IMG/VR virus record: IMGVR_UViG_3300046542_000227
Location: 1-64,000 of that record
Direction: 5' to 3' (one strand)
Length of the DNA: 64,000 bases
Below the pieces are notes generated by a model. That model was not told the DNA's origin, did no database searches, and was given only the letters and a program-made list of their open reading frames with translations. This document shows, piece by piece, positions 10,298 to 47,592 of this stretch (position 1 is the stretch's first letter; each line of letters starts with the position of its first letter). The translations under genes were made by a program, and so were the position numbers.

Positions 10298-10330
10298 CGG
10301 CATAAAGCCCGCCGAAGCGGGCCGTATGTT
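10298..10330 (-). terminator. Intrinsic terminator, TTTATGCCG family
   Basis: Minus strand AACATACG-GCCCGC-TTCG-GCGGGC-TTTATGCCG right after the endolysin stop. Confidence 0.85.
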
Positions 10331-11175
10331 TAGACGTAGGACGAGTACAGTTTGAAGGCATCCGACAGTTTCGTGTCGTACTGGTTTTCCTTATAAGCAG
10401 CACCGTTATACAGCCGTGCCACCTCAGCCCAGTTAAGGGCCTTGAGTGCATTCCAGAGTCCTTTCTGGCTCTTGATGAAACGCACGAAGCATTCGAGTTG
10501 ATTCGCCTCGCTCAGCGAGATGAACTTCACGAAGTCAGTGACGGAGTCAAAGCCAAGCAGTTCCCAGTGGAAACCCATGATCTGGTACGCACCCCATGAG
10601 CACGATTCCCAGGCAGCTTCCTTACTGATCTTCATGGCATTCTCAAGACGCAGCCACTCCTTCTCCCCACCCAGGTAACCACCACGAGCGGTGTTTACTA
10701 GGCCGGGCTGCTCCCGCATTGCTTTAGCCGGGTCTACCCCATAGTCCTTCACTTCACGATACATGATGTGGCGTTCATACAGAATCGCCACTTTGCCGCT
10801 TGGCAGGAAGCCAGTACCTTTGGACTCAACCGAGTTCACTGCCATCACAGCAGCGGTAGGTACCCCCAAAGACTTCGCTGCAGCAGCAATGTCATCCTGG
10901 CACAGATACTTGTGGGACTGCTCAGCCGAAGCCAAGAGCCCCATCGTTTTTGGACCGACCACGCCATCGACGACCAACTTAGCAGTCTTCTGGAAAGCGA
11001 TTACGGCATCGTAAGTCTTCTGCCCAAAGCCACCATCGGGAGTCCCGATGTCGTAGCCTGCGTTCATTAAGTGTTTTTGCAGATCGATGACTGCTGGGCC
11101 TTTATCCCCTCGTCGCAATACCGCGTCTTTGAGGAACGTGGCCCGGTGTTCGACGCCTAGCGCTTCTGTCGTCAT
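10330..11175 (-). CDS. Modular endolysin: PG_binding_1 domain plus DUF3380-type N-acetylmuramidase
   Basis: LRRGDKG..V..LQ..L...GY.....DG.FG..T..AV.AFQ....L.VDG.VGP.T; ILYERH catalytic region; SWG.YQIMGFHW..LG. Confidence 0.9.
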   Translation of the reverse strand: MTTEALGVEHRATFLKDAVLRRGDKGPAVIDLQKHLMNAGYDIGTPDGGFGQKTYDAVIAFQKTAKLVVDGVVGPKTMGLLASAEQSHKYLCQDDIAAAAKSLGVPTAAVMAVNSVESKGTGFLPSGKVAILYERHIMYREVKDYGVDPAKAMREQPGLVNTARGGYLGGEKEWLRLENAMKISKEAAWESCSWGAYQIMGFHWELLGFDSVTDFVKFISLSEANQLECFVRFIKSQKGLWNALKALNWAEVARLYNGAAYKENQYDTKLSDAFKLYSSYV

Positions 11176-11196
11176 CTTAAGTTTTCCTTGCTGTGT

Positions 11197-11745
11197 TTAT
11201 TGGTTCTCCAATCGACGCGTTATTCCGTTTTCAAGCAGGCGCACGGTGCCGTCCTCAAGTAGTCGGAGTCCGAGTTCTTCTGGAGTAGTGTTGACGTAGA
11301 TGGGAACCCAGCCGTAATAAGCAAAGCTCGTACCGAGCATGATCAGCGTATAGACGGTGGCATTATGTTTCGTCATGGGTTGATAGGACACCTCCACATC
11401 ATCGTGGTTTAGGTGCATGTTGAACTTACGGTTGATCTCAGCAACGACCTTAGCCGAAGTGATGGTACCATCGAGTTCGATCCGTACGAACGGCTCATCC
11501 TCGGCGGTGTATTCGCGCAATACTTTGGCGATGTCCAGACGACGGAACAGGAACGGGCGTTTCTTACCCGTCCGCAGGTTAGTCATCTCGATATAGGTAC
11601 GACCTGGCTCCTCCTCGCTGGGGGAGAAGTACATGTCTTCAAACAGGACATAATCGTCCAGCAACTCTTCGGAAGGCCGATCGCGTCGGATCAGCTCAAC
11701 CAACGCCTGCCGTGATGGTAGGTCGAAGGGAAAACGCAGGCTCAT
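11197..11745 (-). CDS. phiKZ-family virion structural protein (baseplate-attachment-type domain)
   Basis: F.RLDI...EINRKFNM.L..DD...S..YYG pattern, also at the N-terminus of 38411..40114; C-terminal RLLEDG/RLLENG repeat. Confidence 0.55.
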   Translation of the reverse strand: MSLRFPFDLPSRQALVELIRRDRPSEELLDDYVLFEDMYFSPSEEEPGRTYIEMTNLRTGKKRPFLFRRLDIAKVLREYTAEDEPFVRIELDGTITSAKVVAEINRKFNMHLNHDDVEVSYQPMTKHNATVYTLIMLGTSFAYYGWVPIYVNTTPEELGLRLLEDGTVRLLENGITRRLENQ

Positions 11746-11807
11746 GACGAGTCCTCATGAAAGTGAAATTGGCACATAGCATTATCCCAGACGGCAAAAA
11801 CCCCCGC

Positions 11808-12245
11808 CTATGCGGCAGGGGCTGGGGTTGCTTGTTGTGCGTCGGACCAAAGCTGTGCAACAAACTTCAGTAGATCAAAGAACTGAGTGAGGGTGAACTT
11901 GAAGATATCCCACATCTCAGGACTGATGGTAGTGTCGCCGTAAACCACCGCCATGGCCAAAACGATCACTACCAGTGTAAGCGTAGCTGCACCAAACAAC
12001 ATGACCTGCTTGTACAGATCGGTTCCACGGACCACACCCAGGTTGTGTTCGAGCAACGCCGTACGTTTGGCTTCGTTCACAATCTTGTAAACTTGGCTGA
12101 GTACGATGTAACCCGGGGTGTCCTTATCGATGGTGCTCCCCTTCTTCCCCAGAGATGCCAGCACAATCGCCCGTATTGCGGCCGAGTATGGACTGGAGTT
12201 AAGTGGTCTATCACCGAGAGAGATCAGCGCCTCCTGCAGTGTCAT
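11808..12245 (-). CDS. Membrane protein, holin candidate (likely start MTLQE at 12245)
   Basis: One strong TM (VMLFGAATLTLVVIVLAMAVVY) plus an amphipathic C-terminal helix; GGAG RBS 7 nt upstream; lies between spanins and endolysin. Confidence 0.45.
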   Translation of the reverse strand: MTLQEALISLGDRPLNSSPYSAAIRAIVLASLGKKGSTIDKDTPGYIVLSQVYKIVNEAKRTALLEHNLGVVRGTDLYKQVMLFGAATLTLVVIVLAMAVVYGDTTISPEMWDIFKFTLTQFFDLLKFVAQLWSDAQQATPAPAA

Positions 12246-12630
12246 GGGTATTCTCCAATGTGGTGGTCTGTTTTTCATACCAGCCATTGAGTGCCTGAAT
12301 TTTGTCGTTGCAGAGTCCGACTTGTTCAGTTTGCTTAGACCACTCGTCTTGCATCATCAAGGCGATGGCTTCCCATTGGGACTTTGCCTTCGGAAACTTA
12401 ATGTACGCAGTTAAGATGTCATCAACGCTGGGTGGTTCACTTGGTTGGCAGGCCGTCAGCATTACCTTTGGTGGGACACGTATCACGGTTGTCGTATGCT
12501 CGACAATACGTGCGGCGCATCCCGTTAACGAGAGCAGCAATAGCGTCAGGATCAGGATTAGTATCCACGCCCACCACTTTGGCTGGCGCTGTTTTGGTTG
12601 GTTGGTGTCCGTTAACTGCAACGTCGACAT
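12211..12630 (-). CDS. o-spanin (Rz1-like outer membrane lipoprotein)
   Basis: Hydrophobic signal ending in lipobox LTGC; Pro/Cys-rich mature part; GGAGG RBS 9 nt upstream; overlaps i-spanin C-terminus in another frame. Confidence 0.75.
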   Translation of the reverse strand: MSTLQLTDTNQPKQRQPKWWAWILILILTLLLLSLTGCAARIVEHTTTVIRVPPKVMLTACQPSEPPSVDDILTAYIKFPKAKSQWEAIALMMQDEWSKQTEQVGLCNDKIQALNGWYEKQTTTLENTHDTAGGADLSR

Positions 12631-12979
12631 CTCCCTTAGCCTCCGGCTTGGTGTATGTAGTGGGTGGATCCTTACTATCGCGAGCTGCGAAGTATTCTTC
12701 GAGAGTCTTGGCGCGATACCCTAATGCTTCTTCTACTTTAAGCTCTCGCTCATAGGTGTATTCAAACACCGCTTGGTCCGTGATCACAGCTGCCTTATGC
12801 TCAGTGGCCACTGCCTCAGTGAGGGTTTGGTTCTGAGTAGTCAGGTTCTGTGTGGCTTCCTCCATACGTCCATAGTTCTTTACAAGTGCTATGAACGTCC
12901 CCACCGCGAACACCACGGCAAGAATACCCACCCATTCAAACCAGGGCAGCTTCCTTAAAAGTGTAAACATAAAATTCAC
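12437..12979 (-). CDS. i-spanin (Rz-like)
   Basis: N-terminal TM (WVGILAVVFAVGTFIALV), then coiled-coil and a C-terminal Cys pair; overlapped by a lipoprotein gene. Confidence 0.7.
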   Translation of the reverse strand: MNFMFTLLRKLPWFEWVGILAVVFAVGTFIALVKNYGRMEEATQNLTTQNQTLTEAVATEHKAAVITDQAVFEYTYERELKVEEALGYRAKTLEEYFAARDSKDPPTTYTKPEAKGDVDVAVNGHQPTKTAPAKVVGVDTNPDPDAIAALVNGMRRTYCRAYDNRDTCPTKGNADGLPTK

Positions 12980-44555: not shown

Positions 44556-44591
44556 CATACGGCCCTCCCCTAGCGGGAGGGCTTTATGCCG
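44554..44591 (+). terminator. Intrinsic terminator, TTTATGCCG family
   Basis: GACATACG-GCCCTCCC-CTAGC-GGGAGGGC-TTTATGCCG. Confidence 0.85.
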
Positions 44592-44683
44592 AGAAATACC
44601 GAAGTATGTAATCTAGTGCTGGGCATTCCAGCCTGTCTCGCATTGAGACGTCAACCAATATACCCACAAAGGGACTTACCACA

Positions 44684-45691
44684 ATGGTAAACGTATTGCT
44701 CGCACAAAAGCTACACCACCACTTGATCAGCTGCGCCATGAACCGTGAACTGACGTGGTTCAATCAAGTGCATGACGTGATCCATGGTACGGAGCACGAA
44801 GATACCTCAGAAGAAGAGGTACAGGAAACCAACGACATTATCAACGCCTTGGCTACTTGGCTGCGCAGCAAGAACATGCCACGCCTTACCGTGCTGATTA
44901 ACAGCGGTAAAGGGGCTGTGGGTGTAGGCAATGGTTTCTGGAAGAACTGTGGGTTGACTGTAAACCCTGCACACTACGAACCAGTGTACAAGATGCTGGT
45001 ACAAGAGTGCTACTCGTACTACGCGGGTTTCTGTGGCTTCGGTCCAGAGATACAGGACATCGTTGAGAAACGCATCCGCGATGCCCGCAACGATGAGTCG
45101 GTCAACAGCGCTGAGATCCTCATGGTGGTCTCGGAACAGATCGAGTACTATGGTCGAGCATCCACCAGTTATGACCAGATTCATTTGGATGCGGTCGGCG
45201 ATAAGCTGATTCCCAAAAACCCACACAAAGAGTTCTTCATTAACATGGCCAAGTGGTTTGAACGGGCCTGCCATGAGAATGACTGCGGTCGCCCAGTGTG
45301 GGACATGGAGTTCTTGCGTGGGGCTATTAAGAAGCTACGTCGTGAGTTCACCCTGACTATCCCTATGGGTGCAACGCATAACCTGTTTAATCTAACCCTC
45401 GGTCGTGAGCTGAAGGAGGGTGAAGCGTATATGGCCACGGTGGATCAGATCCAGATGCTTACCGTGTGTAAGATCGAGGCGTCGGGTCAGAGCCCTATCG
45501 AGCACATCAGTGTTCGCGACGGTCGTTTGCTGGACAGTCCTGAGGCTGGGCGGAACATATACGGTGCAGGGAAGGCTGGTACTATTGAAGTGACTGCTAC
45601 CGGTGACCGTGAACGTTGCTGGTTCAGTGCCCACTGTGGTGGTGAGATCTTTAGCCACGTCACTATCCATGTAACCTTCCGCATGAACTAA
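44684..45691 (+). CDS. Hypothetical protein, 335 aa, His/Cys-rich
   Basis: Single gene between two terminators; no recognisable motif. Confidence 0.6.
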   Translation: MVNVLLAQKLHHHLISCAMNRELTWFNQVHDVIHGTEHEDTSEEEVQETNDIINALATWLRSKNMPRLTVLINSGKGAVGVGNGFWKNCGLTVNPAHYEPVYKMLVQECYSYYAGFCGFGPEIQDIVEKRIRDARNDESVNSAEILMVVSEQIEYYGRASTSYDQIHLDAVGDKLIPKNPHKEFFINMAKWFERACHENDCGRPVWDMEFLRGAIKKLRREFTLTIPMGATHNLFNLTLGRELKEGEAYMATVDQIQMLTVCKIEASGQSPIEHISVRDGRLLDSPEAGRNIYGAGKAGTIEVTATGDRERCWFSAHCGGEIFSHVTIHVTFRMN

Positions 45692-45728
45692 ACATAGGCC
45701 TCTACCTACGGGTAGAGGCTTTATGCCG
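45692..45728 (+). terminator. Intrinsic terminator, TTTATGCCG family
   Basis: ACATAG-GCCTCTACC-TACG-GGTAGAGGC-TTTATGCCG. Confidence 0.85.
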
Positions 45729-45735
45729 TGTAAAA

Positions 45736-45766
45736 CTTGATTCGAATTAATCTGAGAACTATATTG
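45736..45766 (+). promoter_or_regulatory. Early-type promoter (copy 2)
   Basis: CTTGATTCGAATTAATCTGAGAACTATATTG. Confidence 0.75.
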
Positions 45767-45824
45767 CGTAAGTGAATTAGGAGCAATGAGTTCCTAATCA
45801 CATCCCCTTTTCAGGAGAAACAAA

Positions 45825-46193
45825 ATGTTGAACACTATCGCTCGATACATGCTGATCCGCGCTCTGTCGATCATCACCGCTCTGACCCTGCTGGCTGTCT
45901 GGGGTGCTGTGGCTAACAACATGGCTGAACGCAAAGACAAGAAAGCACGTGACGCGAAAGCGAACACTGCTGTTAACCAAGTCAAAACCATGCTGGAAGC
46001 ACTGGCCTCGGAAGTCGAAGCTATGCTGCCACGCTACAACGAATCGAACCTGGTCGAGCGTGCCAATCTGAAAGCTGACCTGCGTGAAGTTTACAACCTC
46101 AAAGGTCGTCAGATCGAAAACGGTAGCGTTCGTGATATCTATCTGACTTCGGTCGATCAGATCATCACCAAGGCTTTTACCGTAGAAGCTTGA
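45825..46193 (+). CDS. Early protein with N-terminal membrane anchor and coiled coil
   Basis: CAGGAG RBS; MLIRALSIITALTLLAVWGAVA TM. Confidence 0.7.
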   Translation: MLNTIARYMLIRALSIITALTLLAVWGAVANNMAERKDKKARDAKANTAVNQVKTMLEALASEVEAMLPRYNESNLVERANLKADLREVYNLKGRQIENGSVRDIYLTSVDQIITKAFTVEA

Positions 46194-46219
46194 TTGAAAA
46201 AGATTTGAAGTATATATAG
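46189..46219 (+). promoter_or_regulatory. Early-type promoter (copy 3)
   Basis: CTTGATTGAAAAAGATTTGAAGTATATATAG; same spacing and internal ATTTGA as copies 1 and 2. Confidence 0.6.
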
Positions 46220-46278
46220 CCTCAGTGAATTGGGAGTCGTAATGGCTCCCTAACCTTCTTATATTCGGAGTATTTAAA

Positions 46279-46656
46279 ATGAACGTACAAGCAATCGCAA
46301 CTAAAGCAGCAATCGGTGCAGTAATCGGCGGTGTAGGTTTCGGTCTGTACAAGCTGGGTTCCAGCCTGTGCCGTCAAGGTCGTGAAGTGATCCAACTGGG
46401 TCAAGCTTCGATCGATATGCACAAGCACATGGACGAAGTCATTGCCGGTAACAAAGATACTGGTGACGGTTGGGAAACCAATGCCCGTGCACAGCTGACT
46501 CTGCTGTGGGAACAAACCGCAACTCCTGCTGCTCGTAAATGCAAGTACTACGATGACGTCACCAAAAGCGTATTCATGCGCTTCGACAAACTCATCGCTG
46601 AAACCATCGCTACCAAACCAACGTCGATCGACGATACCCCGGAGCCAAAAGAATGA
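46279..46656 (+). CDS. Early protein with N-terminal glycine-zipper hydrophobic segment
   Basis: GGAG RBS; AAIGAVIGGVGFGLY. Confidence 0.7.
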   Translation: MNVQAIATKAAIGAVIGGVGFGLYKLGSSLCRQGREVIQLGQASIDMHKHMDEVIAGNKDTGDGWETNARAQLTLLWEQTATPAARKCKYYDDVTKSVFMRFDKLIAETIATKPTSIDDTPEPKE

Positions 46657-46799
46657 GCCTCAAAGACAAAGCCGTACAAGCCAAACGCGACATCGCTGAT
46701 ATCGCTAAGGTTACCTTCAAAGGTGTTGAAGACGGCGTCAAGGTTGGCGCTGCCTTCCTGCCAATGATCATCGCCATGGCTATCATCAGCCGCATCTAA
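46653..46799 (+). CDS. 48-aa membrane peptide (not in ORF track)
   Basis: ATGA overlap with the previous stop; MSLKDKAVQAKRDIADIAKVTFKGVEDGVKVGAAFLPMIIAMAIISRI. Confidence 0.65.
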   Translation: MSLKDKAVQAKRDIADIAKVTFKGVEDGVKVGAAFLPMIIAMAIISRI

Positions 46800-46815
46800 C
46801 TCAAGGACTACGAAC

Positions 46816-46932
46816 ATGAAAAAAGACACTAAAGACATGGCCAAATGCGTTGGTGGTCTGCTGGGCTTCGTAGTTGGTCTGTCCCTGGTAGCACTCGTGG
46901 TTAACAAGACCGCGAGTATTATCCTTGACTGA
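46816..46932 (+). CDS. 38-aa membrane peptide (not in ORF track)
   Basis: AAGGA RBS; MKKDTKDMAKCVGGLLGFVVGLSLVALVVNKTASIILD. Confidence 0.65.
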   Translation: MKKDTKDMAKCVGGLLGFVVGLSLVALVVNKTASIILD

Positions 46933-47011
46933 TTACCAGCCGGCCAGCTACAACCCAAACAACCGTCGTCAACTTACTACCCCTACCCCATCTATTCAAA
47001 AGGATAACACC

Positions 47012-47320
47012 ATGCAAACTCCAGCCAACAAACCTACCTCGATCAACGCTCAGATCAATGCTGCTGCTGAGTCCTGCGGTAAGATCGCTGAAGAAACTCT
47101 GGCGATCATCAACAAGCCTACCCTGCTCGAACGCACCAAGCGTGTTGGTCGTGGTTTCGGTAAAGCTGCTCTCTACACTGCCGGCGCTGCCGTCGTTGGC
47201 GGTGGCTGCTTTCTCGCTTACCGCGCACTCAAGGCCGGTGGTGCTGACGCAGTCGCCGAGGCAGTCGGTGATGTCGCCGCTGCAGCAGCCGATGCAGTCG
47301 CAGCCGCCTTCCGCGGTTGA
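47012..47320 (+). CDS. 102-aa Ala/Gly-rich membrane protein (start MQTPA at 47012)
   Basis: AAGGA RBS; ALYTAGAAVVGGGCFLAY TM preceded by a basic patch. Confidence 0.7.
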   Translation: MQTPANKPTSINAQINAAAESCGKIAEETLAIINKPTLLERTKRVGRGFGKAALYTAGAAVVGGGCFLAYRALKAGGADAVAEAVGDVAAAAADAVAAAFRG

Positions 47321-47381
47321 TGCTGTAACCCCGGGGGAGGACAGCCTCCCCCAACAACTATTATCTACAGGAAATACGAAC

Positions 47382-47495
47382 ATGCCTACCAAGAAATTTA
47401 CGGATGATCAAGAACGCGGTATCGATGCTAACCTGGCTTACGTGGAGTTCCTCCTCGCTAAGCGCAAGAAGAAAGAACTCGCAGGCAACCGCTAA
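47382..47495 (+). CDS. 37-aa basic peptide (not separately in ORF track)
   Basis: CAGGA RBS; MPTKKFTDDQERGIDANLAYVEFLLAKRKKKELAGNR. Confidence 0.55.
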   Translation: MPTKKFTDDQERGIDANLAYVEFLLAKRKKKELAGNR

Positions 47496-47508
47496 TGCTG
47501 CACTTAGA

Positions 47509-47556
47509 AACATAGTACCCGGCCGCAAGGTCGGGCCTATGTTTCTTTTTTCTTTT
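47509..47556 (+). terminator. Terminator ending the small-gene operon
   Basis: AACATAG..CCCGGCC-GCAA-GGTCGGG-CCTATGTTTCTTTTTTCTTTT. Confidence 0.8.
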
Positions 47557-47558
47557 GA

Positions 47559-47588
47559 CGGCATAAGGCCCACCCGAAGGTGAGCCCT
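47559..47588 (-). terminator. Terminator for 47593..48093, TTATGCCG tail
   Basis: Minus strand GGGCTCACC-TTCG-GGTGGGCC-TTATGCCG. Confidence 0.75.
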
Positions 47589-47592
47589 AGGT

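What the first reader, a model, noticed from the sequence alone, without database searches (positions are those of the whole stretch)
45736..47556. Early operon of six small genes, five encoding single-membrane-segment proteins
Two tandem early-type promoters drive ORFs of 122, 125, 48, 38, 102 and 37 aa, each with an RBS or coupled start and codon usage like highly expressed genes, ending at a strong terminator. Three are missing from the ORF track. Five carry one hydrophobic or Gly-zipper helix, in different positions, flanked by basic residues. A dedicated immediate-early membrane-peptide cluster could build or remodel the early phage infection vesicle, block superinfection, or disarm membrane-bound defences (inference). 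I know of no described system matching it.
Basis: partly seen in the sequence, partly recalled or inferred. Interest (0 to 1): 0.7.

Follow-up and report, generated by a model that had tools for sequence, protein, structure and literature searches.

The report
Early membrane-protein operon of a jumbo phage
A nucleus-forming jumbo phage related to Pseudomonas phage Noxifer carries a real, conserved and strongly expressed six-gene operon behind early-type promoters; five of its small products have one membrane-spanning helix, and it is not the lysis cassette, so it is a good but untested candidate for how these phages act on host membranes early in infection.

Summary
The window is the first 64 kb of a 267-kb metagenomic chimallivirus (phiKZ-like) genome; its nearest cultured relative is Pseudomonas phage Noxifer.

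- **Genes are real.** All six ORFs keep the same order in Noxifer (gp179-gp184) and in at least six other metagenomic relatives. dN/dS is 0.2-0.4. Codon usage sits in the top ~5% of the genome.
- **One correction.** ORF5 most likely starts at TTG 46925, giving 131 aa rather than 102.
- **Promoters.** The two promoters belong to a nine-copy class (TTGAYT-N17-TATATW plus a 5' leader hairpin). Its core and leader resemble phiKZ early promoters. They are kept in four genomes.
- **Membrane segments.** Four products have a clear hydrophobic helix. ORF5 has a Gly/Ala-rich one. ORF4 has a GxxxGxxxG motif, exact in six of seven relatives.
- **Not the lysis cassette.** The canonical cassette lies elsewhere in the window (10330-12979, minus strand).
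- **No known family.** Pfam, PHROGs, NCBIfam and fold searches gave no match.
- **Same slot in other phages.** phiKZ, PhiPA3, Psa21, 201phi2-1 and Phabio also hold small single-pass membrane genes at this position. In phiKZ they sit behind two early-promoter motifs and tolerate transposon insertions.

Best reading: an accessory, immediate-early inner-membrane module. Its function is inferred, not shown.

The parts
45698..45730 (+). Terminator of the upstream late (virion) operon: a hairpin followed by CTTTATGCCGT, the phiKZ-type terminator motif. It insulates the cluster on its 5' side.
   Evidence: motif as described for phiKZ in PMC10914365
45737..45765 (+). Promoter P1: TTGATT-N17-TATATT, preceded by TGAGAAC. 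Member of the nine-copy promoter class.
   Evidence: conserved in L002, Noxifer and L004; resembles phiKZ early promoters
45772..45801 (+). 5' leader hairpin of the P1 transcript (GTGAATTAGGAGC...GTTCCTAATCAC).
   Evidence: 59-nt leader -16.9 kcal/mol, z = -3.9; stems differ between genomes with compensating changes
45825..46193 (+). ORF1, 122 aa: N-terminal transmembrane helix (about residues 9-30), a conserved basic cluster, then a three-helix bundle with the invariant motif RDIYL.
   Evidence: AF2 pLDDT 86, pTM 0.81; ortholog of Noxifer gp179
46190..46218 (+). Promoter P2: TTGATT-N17-TATATA. Its -35 element overlaps the ORF1 stop codon.
46232..46250 (+). 5' leader hairpin of the P2 transcript (GGGAGTC-GTAAT-GGCTCCC).
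   Evidence: compensating stem changes in Noxifer (AGGAGCAG/CTGCTCCT) and L004 (GGGAGTC/GACTCCC)
46279..46656 (+). ORF2, 125 aa: Gly-rich transmembrane helix near the N-terminus (G13, G17 and G22 invariant), then a helical soluble part.
   Evidence: ortholog of Noxifer gp180
46653..46799 (+). ORF3, 48 aa: charged N-terminal 30 residues and a C-terminal (tail-anchor type) transmembrane helix, with an F/L-x-P motif in every relative. Its start overlaps the ORF2 stop (ATGA).
   Evidence: ortholog of Noxifer gp181
46816..46932 (+). ORF4, 38 aa: central transmembrane helix with a GxxxGxxxG glycine zipper, exact in six of the seven relatives examined and AxxxGxxxG in L004.
   Evidence: ortholog of Noxifer gp182
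46925..47320 (+). ORF5, 131 aa from TTG (start overlaps the ORF4 stop); there is also a conserved internal ATG at 47012 (102 aa). Disordered N-terminus with a Y-x-P-x-S-Y motif, helical region, basic cluster, Gly/Ala-rich transmembrane helix, then an acidic Ala-rich C-terminal tail ending in AAAFRG.
   Evidence: ortholog of Noxifer gp183; a 71-aa paralog lies at genome 243624-243839 behind the same promoter class
47333..47352 (+). Conserved intercistronic stem-loop between ORF5 and ORF6 (GGGGGAGG-ACAG-CCTCCCCC), with no U-run after it.
   Evidence: stems differ in L002, Noxifer and L004 with compensating changes
47382..47495 (+). ORF6, 37 aa, no transmembrane helix: invariant AYVE-x-LLA followed by a polybasic stretch.
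   Evidence: ortholog of Noxifer gp184
47506..47557 (+). Operon terminator: a 17-bp interrupted stem with a GCAA loop, followed by TTTTTTCTTTT.
   Evidence: conserved in four genomes

Best explanation
This is an accessory, immediate-early operon of a Noxifer-like chimallivirus.

Shown:
- Six real protein-coding genes sit under two tandem promoters of the phage's strongest promoter class.
- The transcripts have stabilising-type 5' hairpins, good ribosome-binding sites or coupled starts, top-5% codon bias and a strong terminator, so the products are predicted to be abundant.
- Five products carry a single transmembrane helix.

Inferred:
- The virion RNA polymerase transcribes the operon within minutes of injection.
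- The products insert into the host cytoplasmic membrane, with most of their mass (ORF1 ~90 aa, ORF2 ~100 aa, ORF3 30 aa, ORF5 ~80 aa) facing the cytoplasm. This follows the positive-inside rule: basic clusters flank the cytoplasmic end of each helix. Only stubs, plus the acidic Ala-rich tail of ORF5, would face the periplasm.
- The small-residue/glycine-zipper helices (ORF2, ORF4, ORF5) and the tight or overlapping gene junctions (ORF2/3, ORF4/5) suggest stoichiometric hetero-oligomers. ORF6 would be a soluble partner.
- The most likely job is to bind or re-model host inner-membrane machinery early in infection, for the phage's competitive benefit. That could mean exclusion of superinfecting or competing phages, or envelope and host takeover. 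It is less likely to be a step every chimallivirus needs.
For: Genes are real and selected:
- Same-order orthologs occur in Noxifer gp179-184, in L002 and L004, in L024, L025 and L026, and in the more distant L008 and L009.
- dN/dS is 0.22-0.44. Coding and codon-bias scores are high.

Early class:
- The promoter core and leader (TTGAGAnnTATATT ... GTGnAATTAGGA) are shared with phiKZ TATATTAC promoters.
- chmA carries the CTATAT core, while flanking virion genes carry TATG instead.
- P1 and P2 are kept in four genomes.

Membrane character:
- Hydropathy supports the helices.
- The AF2 model of ORF1 is a transmembrane helix plus a three-helix bundle.
- The glycine-zipper and basic-flank residues are conserved.

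Accessory rather than core:
- The ORF1 family has only 8 representatives among 1.84 billion proteins.
- Identity to Noxifer is 33-61%, against 57-84% for neighbouring genes and chmA.
- phiKZ genes in the same slot are also early-promoter-driven single-pass membrane proteins. They tolerate transposon insertions (supplementary tables of bioRxiv 10.1101/2025.11.23.690004).

Not lysis: the complete lysis cassette is at 10330-12979 on the minus strand.
Against: - No expression data exist. Only metagenomic DNA runs hold this sequence.
- Topology rests on hydropathy and charge rules alone. ORF1 orthologs also carry an A-x-A motif after the helix, so a cleaved or periplasmic form is not excluded.
- No interaction could be supported (see Tried and rejected).
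- No homology or fold match ties any of the six to a protein of known function.
- The phiKZ slot genes are positional analogs, not demonstrable homologs (hhalign probability 6%). Their dispensability is therefore only indirect evidence.
- The promoters also look like near-consensus sigma-70 promoters, so which polymerase reads them is not settled.
Confidence: 0.4

Rival explanations
1. EPI-vesicle role. The proteins insert into the membrane of the early phage infection vesicle from its cytoplasmic face. There they coat, dock or rupture it, so that the genome passes into the nascent chimallin shell.
For: - Early-type promoters and signals of very high expression.
- Bulk of the proteins predicted on the cytoplasmic face, and tail-anchored or short proteins could insert without a translocon.
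- A small membrane-gene cluster sits at the same genomic slot in six chimallivirus lineages.
- Reviews name no phage-encoded vesicle membrane protein.
Against: - The vesicle is general to Chimalliviridae, yet this family is limited to a narrow clade and is not homologous to the phiKZ slot genes.
- The phiKZ slot genes tolerate insertions.
- Evolution is fast.
Confidence: 0.12
2. Anti-defence module. The proteins neutralise membrane-bound abortive-infection or pore-forming defence effectors of the host.
For: Early, abundant, fast-evolving, clade-restricted, and non-essential by analogy. The same phiKZ transposon study found that most phiKZ genes are dispensable in the laboratory and that few of them have a known anti-defence role.
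Against: - No similarity to any known anti-defence protein.
- Six genes kept in the same order across deep divergence looks more like one machine than a set of independent counter-defence singletons.
Confidence: 0.15
3. Lysis-timing control. The products act as an antiholin, a lysis-inhibition sensor or a second holin-like pore system.
For: - Small single-pass proteins with glycine zippers, as in pinholins.
- ORF5 has the N-in, one-helix, short C-out layout that the phiKZ lysis-cassette study calls a class IIIb holin (gp142), and it has two conserved starts.
- phiKZ shows lysis-inhibition-like behaviour at high multiplicity (PMC12894885).
Against: - A complete canonical cassette lies 33 kb away at 10330-12979 (-): endolysin, gp143-like regulator, holin candidate, LysC-type o-spanin and i-spanin.
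- The cluster's promoters are of the early type, not the TATG late type.
- Massive early expression of a holin would be lethal.
- No lipobox and no adjacent endolysin.
Confidence: 0.1
4. Host takeover at the membrane of another kind, for example a block of cell division or of envelope synthesis. Known examples are SPO1 gp56 and lambda Kil.
For: Early small membrane-anchored proteins with cytoplasmic domains. From general knowledge, cells infected by chimalliviruses stop dividing.
Against: No homology to known division inhibitors. Nothing in the sequence points to a specific target.
Confidence: 0.1
5. The small ORFs are chance open frames, or untranslated parts of a structured RNA.
For: Three are under 50 codons. 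The region holds several conserved hairpins.
Against: - All six are kept with their length, order and residue motifs in eight or more genomes at 30-60% identity.
- dN/dS is below 0.5.
- Every alternative frame scores lower, nearly all negative.
- No Rfam family matches.
Confidence: 0.02

Closest known systems
Pseudomonas phage Noxifer gp179-gp184 (NC_041994; all annotated 'hypothetical protein')
   Same: One-to-one orthologs in the same order, between the internal-head genes and the convergent gp169 homolog. Both promoters, the leader hairpins, the intercistronic hairpin and the terminator are also shared.
   Different: Only 33-61% amino-acid identity. Nothing is known about their function, so the match names the family but does not explain it.
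phiKZ orf166.1, 167, 168 and the same slot in PhiPA3, Psa21, 201phi2-1 and Phabio
   Same: Same genomic position, just upstream of and convergent with the gp169 homolog. All are small single-pass membrane proteins. In phiKZ two TATATTAC early-promoter motifs stand in tandem before orf166 and orf166.1.
   Different: No demonstrable sequence homology (hhalign probability 6%). The number and architecture of the genes differ, and a gp167-like family (soluble N-domain plus C-terminal helix) is absent from the window.
T4 Imm and Sp (early small membrane proteins for superinfection exclusion)
   Same: Early expression, small size, membrane anchoring, and dispensable in single infection. This comparison rests on general knowledge.
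   Different: No sequence or family match. Here there are six co-transcribed genes, mostly cytoplasm-facing by prediction. No exclusion phenotype has been tested.
Bacillus phage SPO1 host-takeover module (for example the membrane protein gp56)
   Same: A block of small early genes with several strong promoters and strong ribosome-binding sites, including a single-pass membrane protein that acts on a host membrane machine. This comparison rests on general knowledge.
   Different: Unrelated phage and unrelated sequences. The SPO1 module is mostly soluble proteins.
phiKZ lysis cassette gp141/141.1/142/143/144 (PMC12894885)
   Same: Small single-pass membrane proteins. ORF5 resembles the class IIIb holin layout (long cytoplasmic N-part, one helix).
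   Different: The true homologs of that cassette lie at window 10330-12979 (-). The cluster has no endolysin and no lipoprotein, and its promoter type is different.

Membership tests
Noxifer gp179-gp184 gene cluster (uncharacterised family) | Pairwise sequence homology of each of the six products | tested here: met
   BLASTP E-values of 2e-24, 4e-13, 2e-13, 4e-10 and 8e-26 for ORF1-5. ORF6 aligns with 43-62% identity and an invariant AYVE-x-LLA motif.
Noxifer gp179-gp184 gene cluster (uncharacterised family) | Same gene order and same flanking genes | tested here: met
Chimallivirus early (virion RNA polymerase) transcription unit | Phage-specific AT-rich conserved motif centred near -10, repeated upstream of early operons (PMC7598289, PMC8244752) | tested here: met
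   Nine-copy TTGAYT-N17-TATATW class. Its core and leader resemble phiKZ TATATTAC promoters. The CTATAT core is also found upstream of chmA.
Chimallivirus early (virion RNA polymerase) transcription unit | Transcripts present in the first minutes of infection, with mapped start sites | not testable with these tools
   Only metagenomic DNA runs hold the sequence.
Canonical multigene lysis cassette (holin, endolysin, spanins) | Clustered with the endolysin and homologous to phiKZ gp141-144 | tested here: not met
   tblastn places the gp141.1, gp143 and gp144 homologs at 10822-12483 (-). LysC Pfam hit at 12211-12630.
Canonical multigene lysis cassette (holin, endolysin, spanins) | An o-spanin lipobox, or a late-type promoter | tested here: not met
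   No lipobox in any of the six sequences (read directly). The promoters are not of the TATG type seen before virion genes.
T4 Imm/Sp-type superinfection exclusion proteins | Sequence family membership | tested here: not met
   No Pfam, PHROG or NCBIfam hit at permissive thresholds.
T4 Imm/Sp-type superinfection exclusion proteins | Blocks secondary infection when expressed | not testable with these tools
   Needs an experiment in Noxifer / P. fluorescens SBW25.
phiKZ orf166.1-like small membrane proteins (same slot) | Homology of the transmembrane helix plus acidic tail | tested here: not met
   Profile-profile comparison of A7 against A8: probability 6.3%.
Glycine-zipper transmembrane helices (GxxxGxxxG) | Conserved small-xxx-small repeats within the hydrophobic helix | tested here: met
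   ORF4: G-x3-G-x3-G in six of seven relatives, A-x3-G-x3-G in L004. ORF2: G13, G17 and G22 invariant. ORF5: A86, A88, G92 and G93 invariant.

The most novel reading that the evidence does not exclude
These are the first phage-encoded membrane proteins of the chimallivirus early infection vesicle. Made from the first transcripts, they would insert into the vesicle membrane from the cytoplasmic side, and their glycine-zipper helices would open or dock it to hand the genome over to the growing chimallin shell. The non-homologous small membrane genes in the same slot of phiKZ, PhiPA3, Psa21, 201phi2-1 and Phabio would be functional equivalents.
Probability: 0.1. Interest if true: 0.85.

Novelty: new variant of a known kind. 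Interest (0 to 1): 0.5.

Why it matters
Nucleus-forming jumbo phages begin infection inside a lipid vesicle. Reviews name no phage-encoded membrane protein that acts in that early phase.

This operon is a compact and strongly expressed set of early membrane proteins. It is conserved across a clade that includes a cultured phage, Noxifer, on the harmless host P. fluorescens SBW25, so it can be tested directly.

Several chimallivirus genera keep small single-pass membrane genes at the same slot, and phiKZ has tandem early promoters there. That points to a recurring functional niche and gives candidates in the model phages.

If the role turns out to be superinfection exclusion or host takeover, it adds a new family to a known kind. 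If it concerns the vesicle, it addresses an open question in the field.

Tried and rejected
- **Family searches.** Megablast and tblastn against cultured phages found only Noxifer for the cluster genes. The word-based protein search found only the window's own ORF1. PHROGs, Pfam and NCBIfam gave no credible hit for any of the six, even at permissive thresholds. ESM Atlas gave nothing usable for ORF5 or ORF2. A full HMMER profile search with ORF1 returned 8 representatives, all from the same clade.
- **Structure.** The ORF1 model is confident, but PDB, BFVD and AlphaFold DB searches returned only generic helical bundles and the Noxifer ortholog. The ORF5 model is poor (pLDDT 48), so it was not searched.
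- **Complex prediction.** The soluble parts of ORF1, ORF2 and ORF5 were folded with ORF6 as partner. Result: no verdict, which is not evidence either way.
- **Homology to the phiKZ slot.** Homology between the ORF5 helix/tail family and phiKZ gp166.1-like proteins was considered because both share an AY-x-R/K helix end and an acidic tail. It was rejected at hhalign probability 6%.
- **ORF6 as a membrane-binding helix.** An amphipathic-helix reading was considered, but hydrophobic moments in the conserved part are unremarkable.
- **Lysis cassette.** Considered and rejected.
- **Other.** Rfam gave no family. RNA-seq runs: none found. Temporal class of phiKZ orf166-168: the primary paper and the supplements were not held. 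An IMG/VR search with the upstream 335-aa gene found nothing.
Full report
**What the window is.** The window is the first 64 kb of a single 267,320-bp contig. The only sequencing run that holds it completely is a rhizosphere metagenome.
- Its genes place it in the nucleus-forming jumbo phages (Chimalliviridae). It has phiKZ-type internal head proteins and a chimallin gene with 84% identity to Noxifer and 39% to phiKZ gp54.
- It also has phiKZ-like lysis genes.
- The nearest cultured relative is Pseudomonas phage Noxifer, whose host is P. fluorescens SBW25.

**The observation.** Six ORFs lie head to tail on the + strand between 45825 and 47495.
- Each has a GGAG or AGGA box 6-12 nt upstream, or overlaps the previous stop. 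ORF3 overlaps by ATGA, and the TTG start of ORF5 lies inside the last codons of ORF4.
- In a codon model trained on this genome, all six score 0.53-0.72 bits per codon. The genome median is 0.39 and the 95th percentile 0.61. Every alternative frame scores lower, nearly all negative.
- On the first axis of synonymous codon usage (27% of the variance), the major capsid, sheath, chimallin and internal-head genes sit at the top. The pooled cluster is at the 96th percentile.

**Conservation.** Noxifer annotates gp179-gp184 in exactly this order.
- The same six genes occur in the same order in two IMG/VR genomes of 284 and 269 kb (L002, L004), a 141-kb ENA contig and two Logan contigs (L024-L026).
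- Two more distant Logan contigs (L008, L009) share only about 25% identity in ORF1. They run off before the end of the cluster, so only ORF1-ORF4 and the start of ORF5 are seen there.
- Lengths barely vary: 115-128, 113-132, 45-49, 37-40 and 36-39 aa for ORF1-4 and ORF6. ORF5 varies more (131-161 aa).
- Pairwise dN/dS over the cluster is 0.22-0.44. These are protein-coding genes under purifying selection.
- They diverge faster (33-61% identity to Noxifer) than their neighbours (57-63%) or chimallin (84%).
- A profile of ORF1 finds only 8 representatives among 1.84 billion proteins, so the family is confined to this clade.

**ORF5 is longer than reported.** In all four full genomes the ORF5 frame is open back to a TTG that overlaps the ORF4 stop.
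- The peptide M-T-D/N-x-Y-x-P-x-S-Y-T/N-P is conserved while the codons differ. The serine is AGC in the window and TCC, TCT or TCA elsewhere.
- In L008 and L009 an in-frame ATG heads a matching Y-x-P N-terminus. The gene calls there are mixed: one starts at this ATG, another further downstream.
- Noxifer's annotators chose the long form.
- The product is therefore most likely 131 aa. The internal ATG 47012 and its AAGGA box are also conserved, so two isoforms cannot be excluded.

**Promoters and RNA elements.** A generic sigma-70 scan is not above chance, but the two sites are members of a distinctive repeated element.
- *The element.* It reads CTTGAYT, 17 nt ending in TGAGAAC, TATATW, about 6 nt, then GTGAATTRGGAG, which opens a 7-8-bp hairpin.
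- *Copy number.* A matrix built from it finds nine sites in the genome. All are on the + strand and upstream of ORFs.
- *Conservation.* P1 and P2 are present at the same places in Noxifer, L002 and L004. The leader stems change by compensating substitutions, for example AGGAGCAG/CTGCTCCT against GGGAGTC/GACTCCC.
- *Link to phiKZ.* The phiKZ early motif as I recall it (TATATTAC) occurs in an extended context, AAAAnnTTGAGAnnTATATTAC, upstream of orf166, 166.1, 185 and 204. The orf185 copy is followed by GTGTAATTAGGA, nearly the same leader as here. Published work describes phiKZ early promoters as an AT-rich conserved motif around -10 with a T-rich upstream part (PMC7598289 and PMC8244752).
- *Temporal contrast.* The chimallin gene, an early gene in phiKZ, has CCTATATCAC 73 nt upstream. 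The virion genes around the cluster have TATG motifs like phiKZ late promoters, and no CTATAT.
- *Conclusion and caveat.* The early assignment is well supported by analogy but not measured. The element is also a near-consensus sigma-70 promoter, so the identity of the polymerase remains open.
- *Insulation.* The operon is bounded by a phiKZ-type terminator upstream (hairpin plus CTTTATGCCGT, 45698-45730; motif from PMC10914365). Downstream is a different, classical terminator (17-bp stem plus U-run, 47506-47557), kept in four genomes.
- *Intercistronic hairpin.* An 8-bp GC hairpin between ORF5 and ORF6 (47333-47352) is also kept with compensating changes.

**The proteins.**
- *ORF1* has an N-terminal hydrophobic helix followed by a conserved basic cluster and a confidently modelled three-helix bundle (pLDDT 86, pTM 0.81). 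The bundle ends in an invariant RDIYL motif.
- *ORF2* has a Gly-rich helix near the N-terminus (G13, G17 and G22 invariant) and a helical remainder.
- *ORF3* is tail-anchored, with an F/L-x-P motif in the helix.
- *ORF4*, at 38 aa, is little more than a GxxxGxxxG helix with a basic N-terminus.
- *ORF5* has a disordered N-terminus, two helices, a K/R cluster, a Gly/Ala-rich helix, and an acidic Ala-rich tail ending in AAAFRG. A 71-aa paralog consists of just the helix and tail. It lies at 243624 behind another promoter of the same class, and all three relatives searched have it too.
- *ORF6* has no hydrophobic helix, but it has an invariant AYVE-x-LLA followed by KRKKK.
- *Topology.* By the positive-inside rule the soluble parts of ORF1, 2, 3 and 5 would face the cytoplasm. 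This is inference from hydropathy and charge only. ORF1 orthologs also have an A-x-A after the helix, so signal cleavage is not excluded.

**What it is not.** The canonical lysis cassette described for phiKZ (PMC12894885) has its homologs at window 10330-12979 on the minus strand:
- endolysin, 10330-11175;
- gp143-like regulator, 11197-11745;
- a one-helix holin candidate, 11808-12287;
- a LysC-type o-spanin, 12211-12630;
- an i-spanin, 12437-12979.

The cluster has no lipobox and no adjacent endolysin. No protein family, fold library or RNA family matches it.

**Wider synteny.** The cluster sits just upstream of, and convergent with, the homolog of phiKZ gp169. That gene is found in 68 records of Pseudomonas chimalliviruses. 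The same slot holds small single-pass membrane genes in five other phages:

| Phage | Genes in the slot | Size and helix position |
|---|---|---|
| phiKZ | orf166.1, 167, 168 | 68 aa N-terminal helix; 142 aa C-terminal helix; 218 aa internal helix |
| PhiPA3 | genes 191, 192, 196 | 70 and 97 aa N-terminal helices; 142 aa C-terminal helix |
| Psa21 | gp228-230 | 74, 57 and 55 aa |
| 201phi2-1 | gp252-254 | 108, 150 and 86 aa |
| Phabio | gp239, 242, 243 | 44, 44 and 156 aa |

- In phiKZ two TATATTAC motifs stand in tandem before orf166 and orf166.1, mirroring P1 and P2.
- The sequences are not demonstrably homologous.
- In the phiKZ transposon screen, orf166, 166.1, 167 and 168 carry insertions. 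orf165 and orf170 carry none in one data set, and orf169 almost none (supplementary tables of bioRxiv 10.1101/2025.11.23.690004).
- So a recurring early membrane-protein slot exists in this phage family, and in the one phage tested it is dispensable in the laboratory.

**Mechanism.** The features are these:
- strong early signals;
- stoichiometric gene coupling;
- small-residue helices suited to helix-helix packing;
- cytoplasm-facing domains;
- fast divergence;
- clade restriction;
- dispensability of the analogs.

Taken together they point to an accessory inner-membrane module made immediately after injection. It would bind or re-model host membrane machinery, with exclusion of secondary or competing phages or envelope takeover as the most probable benefit (confidence about 0.4).

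The rivals are a role at the infection vesicle (0.12), counter-defence against membrane effectors (0.15), lysis-timing control (0.10), another takeover function such as a division block (0.10), and non-coding or chance ORFs (0.02).

**Novelty.** The genes are already annotated as hypothetical proteins in Noxifer, so they are not new as sequences. New here, as far as the searched literature shows, are three points:
- their recognition as one conserved early operon of membrane proteins;
- the promoter and leader class;
- the positional equivalence across chimallivirus genera.

I rate it a new variant of a known kind (early accessory small membrane proteins of lytic phages), of moderate interest.

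Noticed in passing
window 10330-12979 (-): Complete phiKZ-type lysis cassette: endolysin (10330-11175), gp143-like lysis regulator (11197-11745), one-helix holin candidate (11808-12287), LysC-type o-spanin (12211-12630) overlapping the i-spanin (12437-12979).
   Followed up: partly
genome G000 sites 28957, 45737, 46190, 79302, 140439, 150889, 243072, 243535, 246131 (all + strand): A nine-copy promoter class, TTGAYT-N17-TATATW, followed by a GTGAATTRGGAG leader hairpin. It looks like a near-consensus sigma-70 promoter, yet its core and leader match phiKZ early promoters. A second, looser class (CCTATATCAY without the -35 box or the hairpin) precedes chmA and about eight other genes.
   Followed up: partly
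window 47333-47352: Conserved 8-bp GC stem-loop between ORF5 and ORF6 with compensating stem changes in four genomes and no U-run. It may be a processing, stability or attenuation element.
   Followed up: partly
genome G000 243624-243839 (L013:225-437): A 71-aa paralog of the ORF5 transmembrane helix and acidic Ala-rich tail (ends AAAFRG), behind its own promoter of the same class. It is conserved at 68-70% identity in L002, Noxifer and L004.
   Followed up: partly
genome G000 79899, 102196, 243107, 246540, 246780, 247606: Other operons behind the same promoter class also carry small single-helix ORFs (61-134 aa). Small membrane proteins therefore seem to be a general feature of this phage's putative early genes.
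   Followed up: no
window 44684-45691; Noxifer L001 15571-16622: The 335-aa gene upstream of the cluster is split into gp177 and gp178 in the Noxifer record, but it is intact in the window, L002, L004 and the close Noxifer relative L024. This suggests a frameshift or a sequencing error in Noxifer. In L008 a different 144-aa membrane gene sits in its place.
   Followed up: partly
window 45698-45730 (+), about 44560-44600 (+), about 47560-47592 (-): Terminators of the phiKZ type (GC hairpin followed by CTTTATGCCGT) end the flanking late genes. The cluster's own terminator is of a different type, with a long stem and a U-run.
   Followed up: partly
window 37018, 40809, 44684; genome 162858, 236142, 251712: Virion genes have TATG motifs shortly upstream, like phiKZ late promoters.
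   Followed up: no
L008 1154-1633 and 2043-2465: In this distant relative the promoter leader is repeated before an extra ORF2-like membrane gene (144 aa) that stands ahead of ORF1. This indicates duplication within the module.
   Followed up: no
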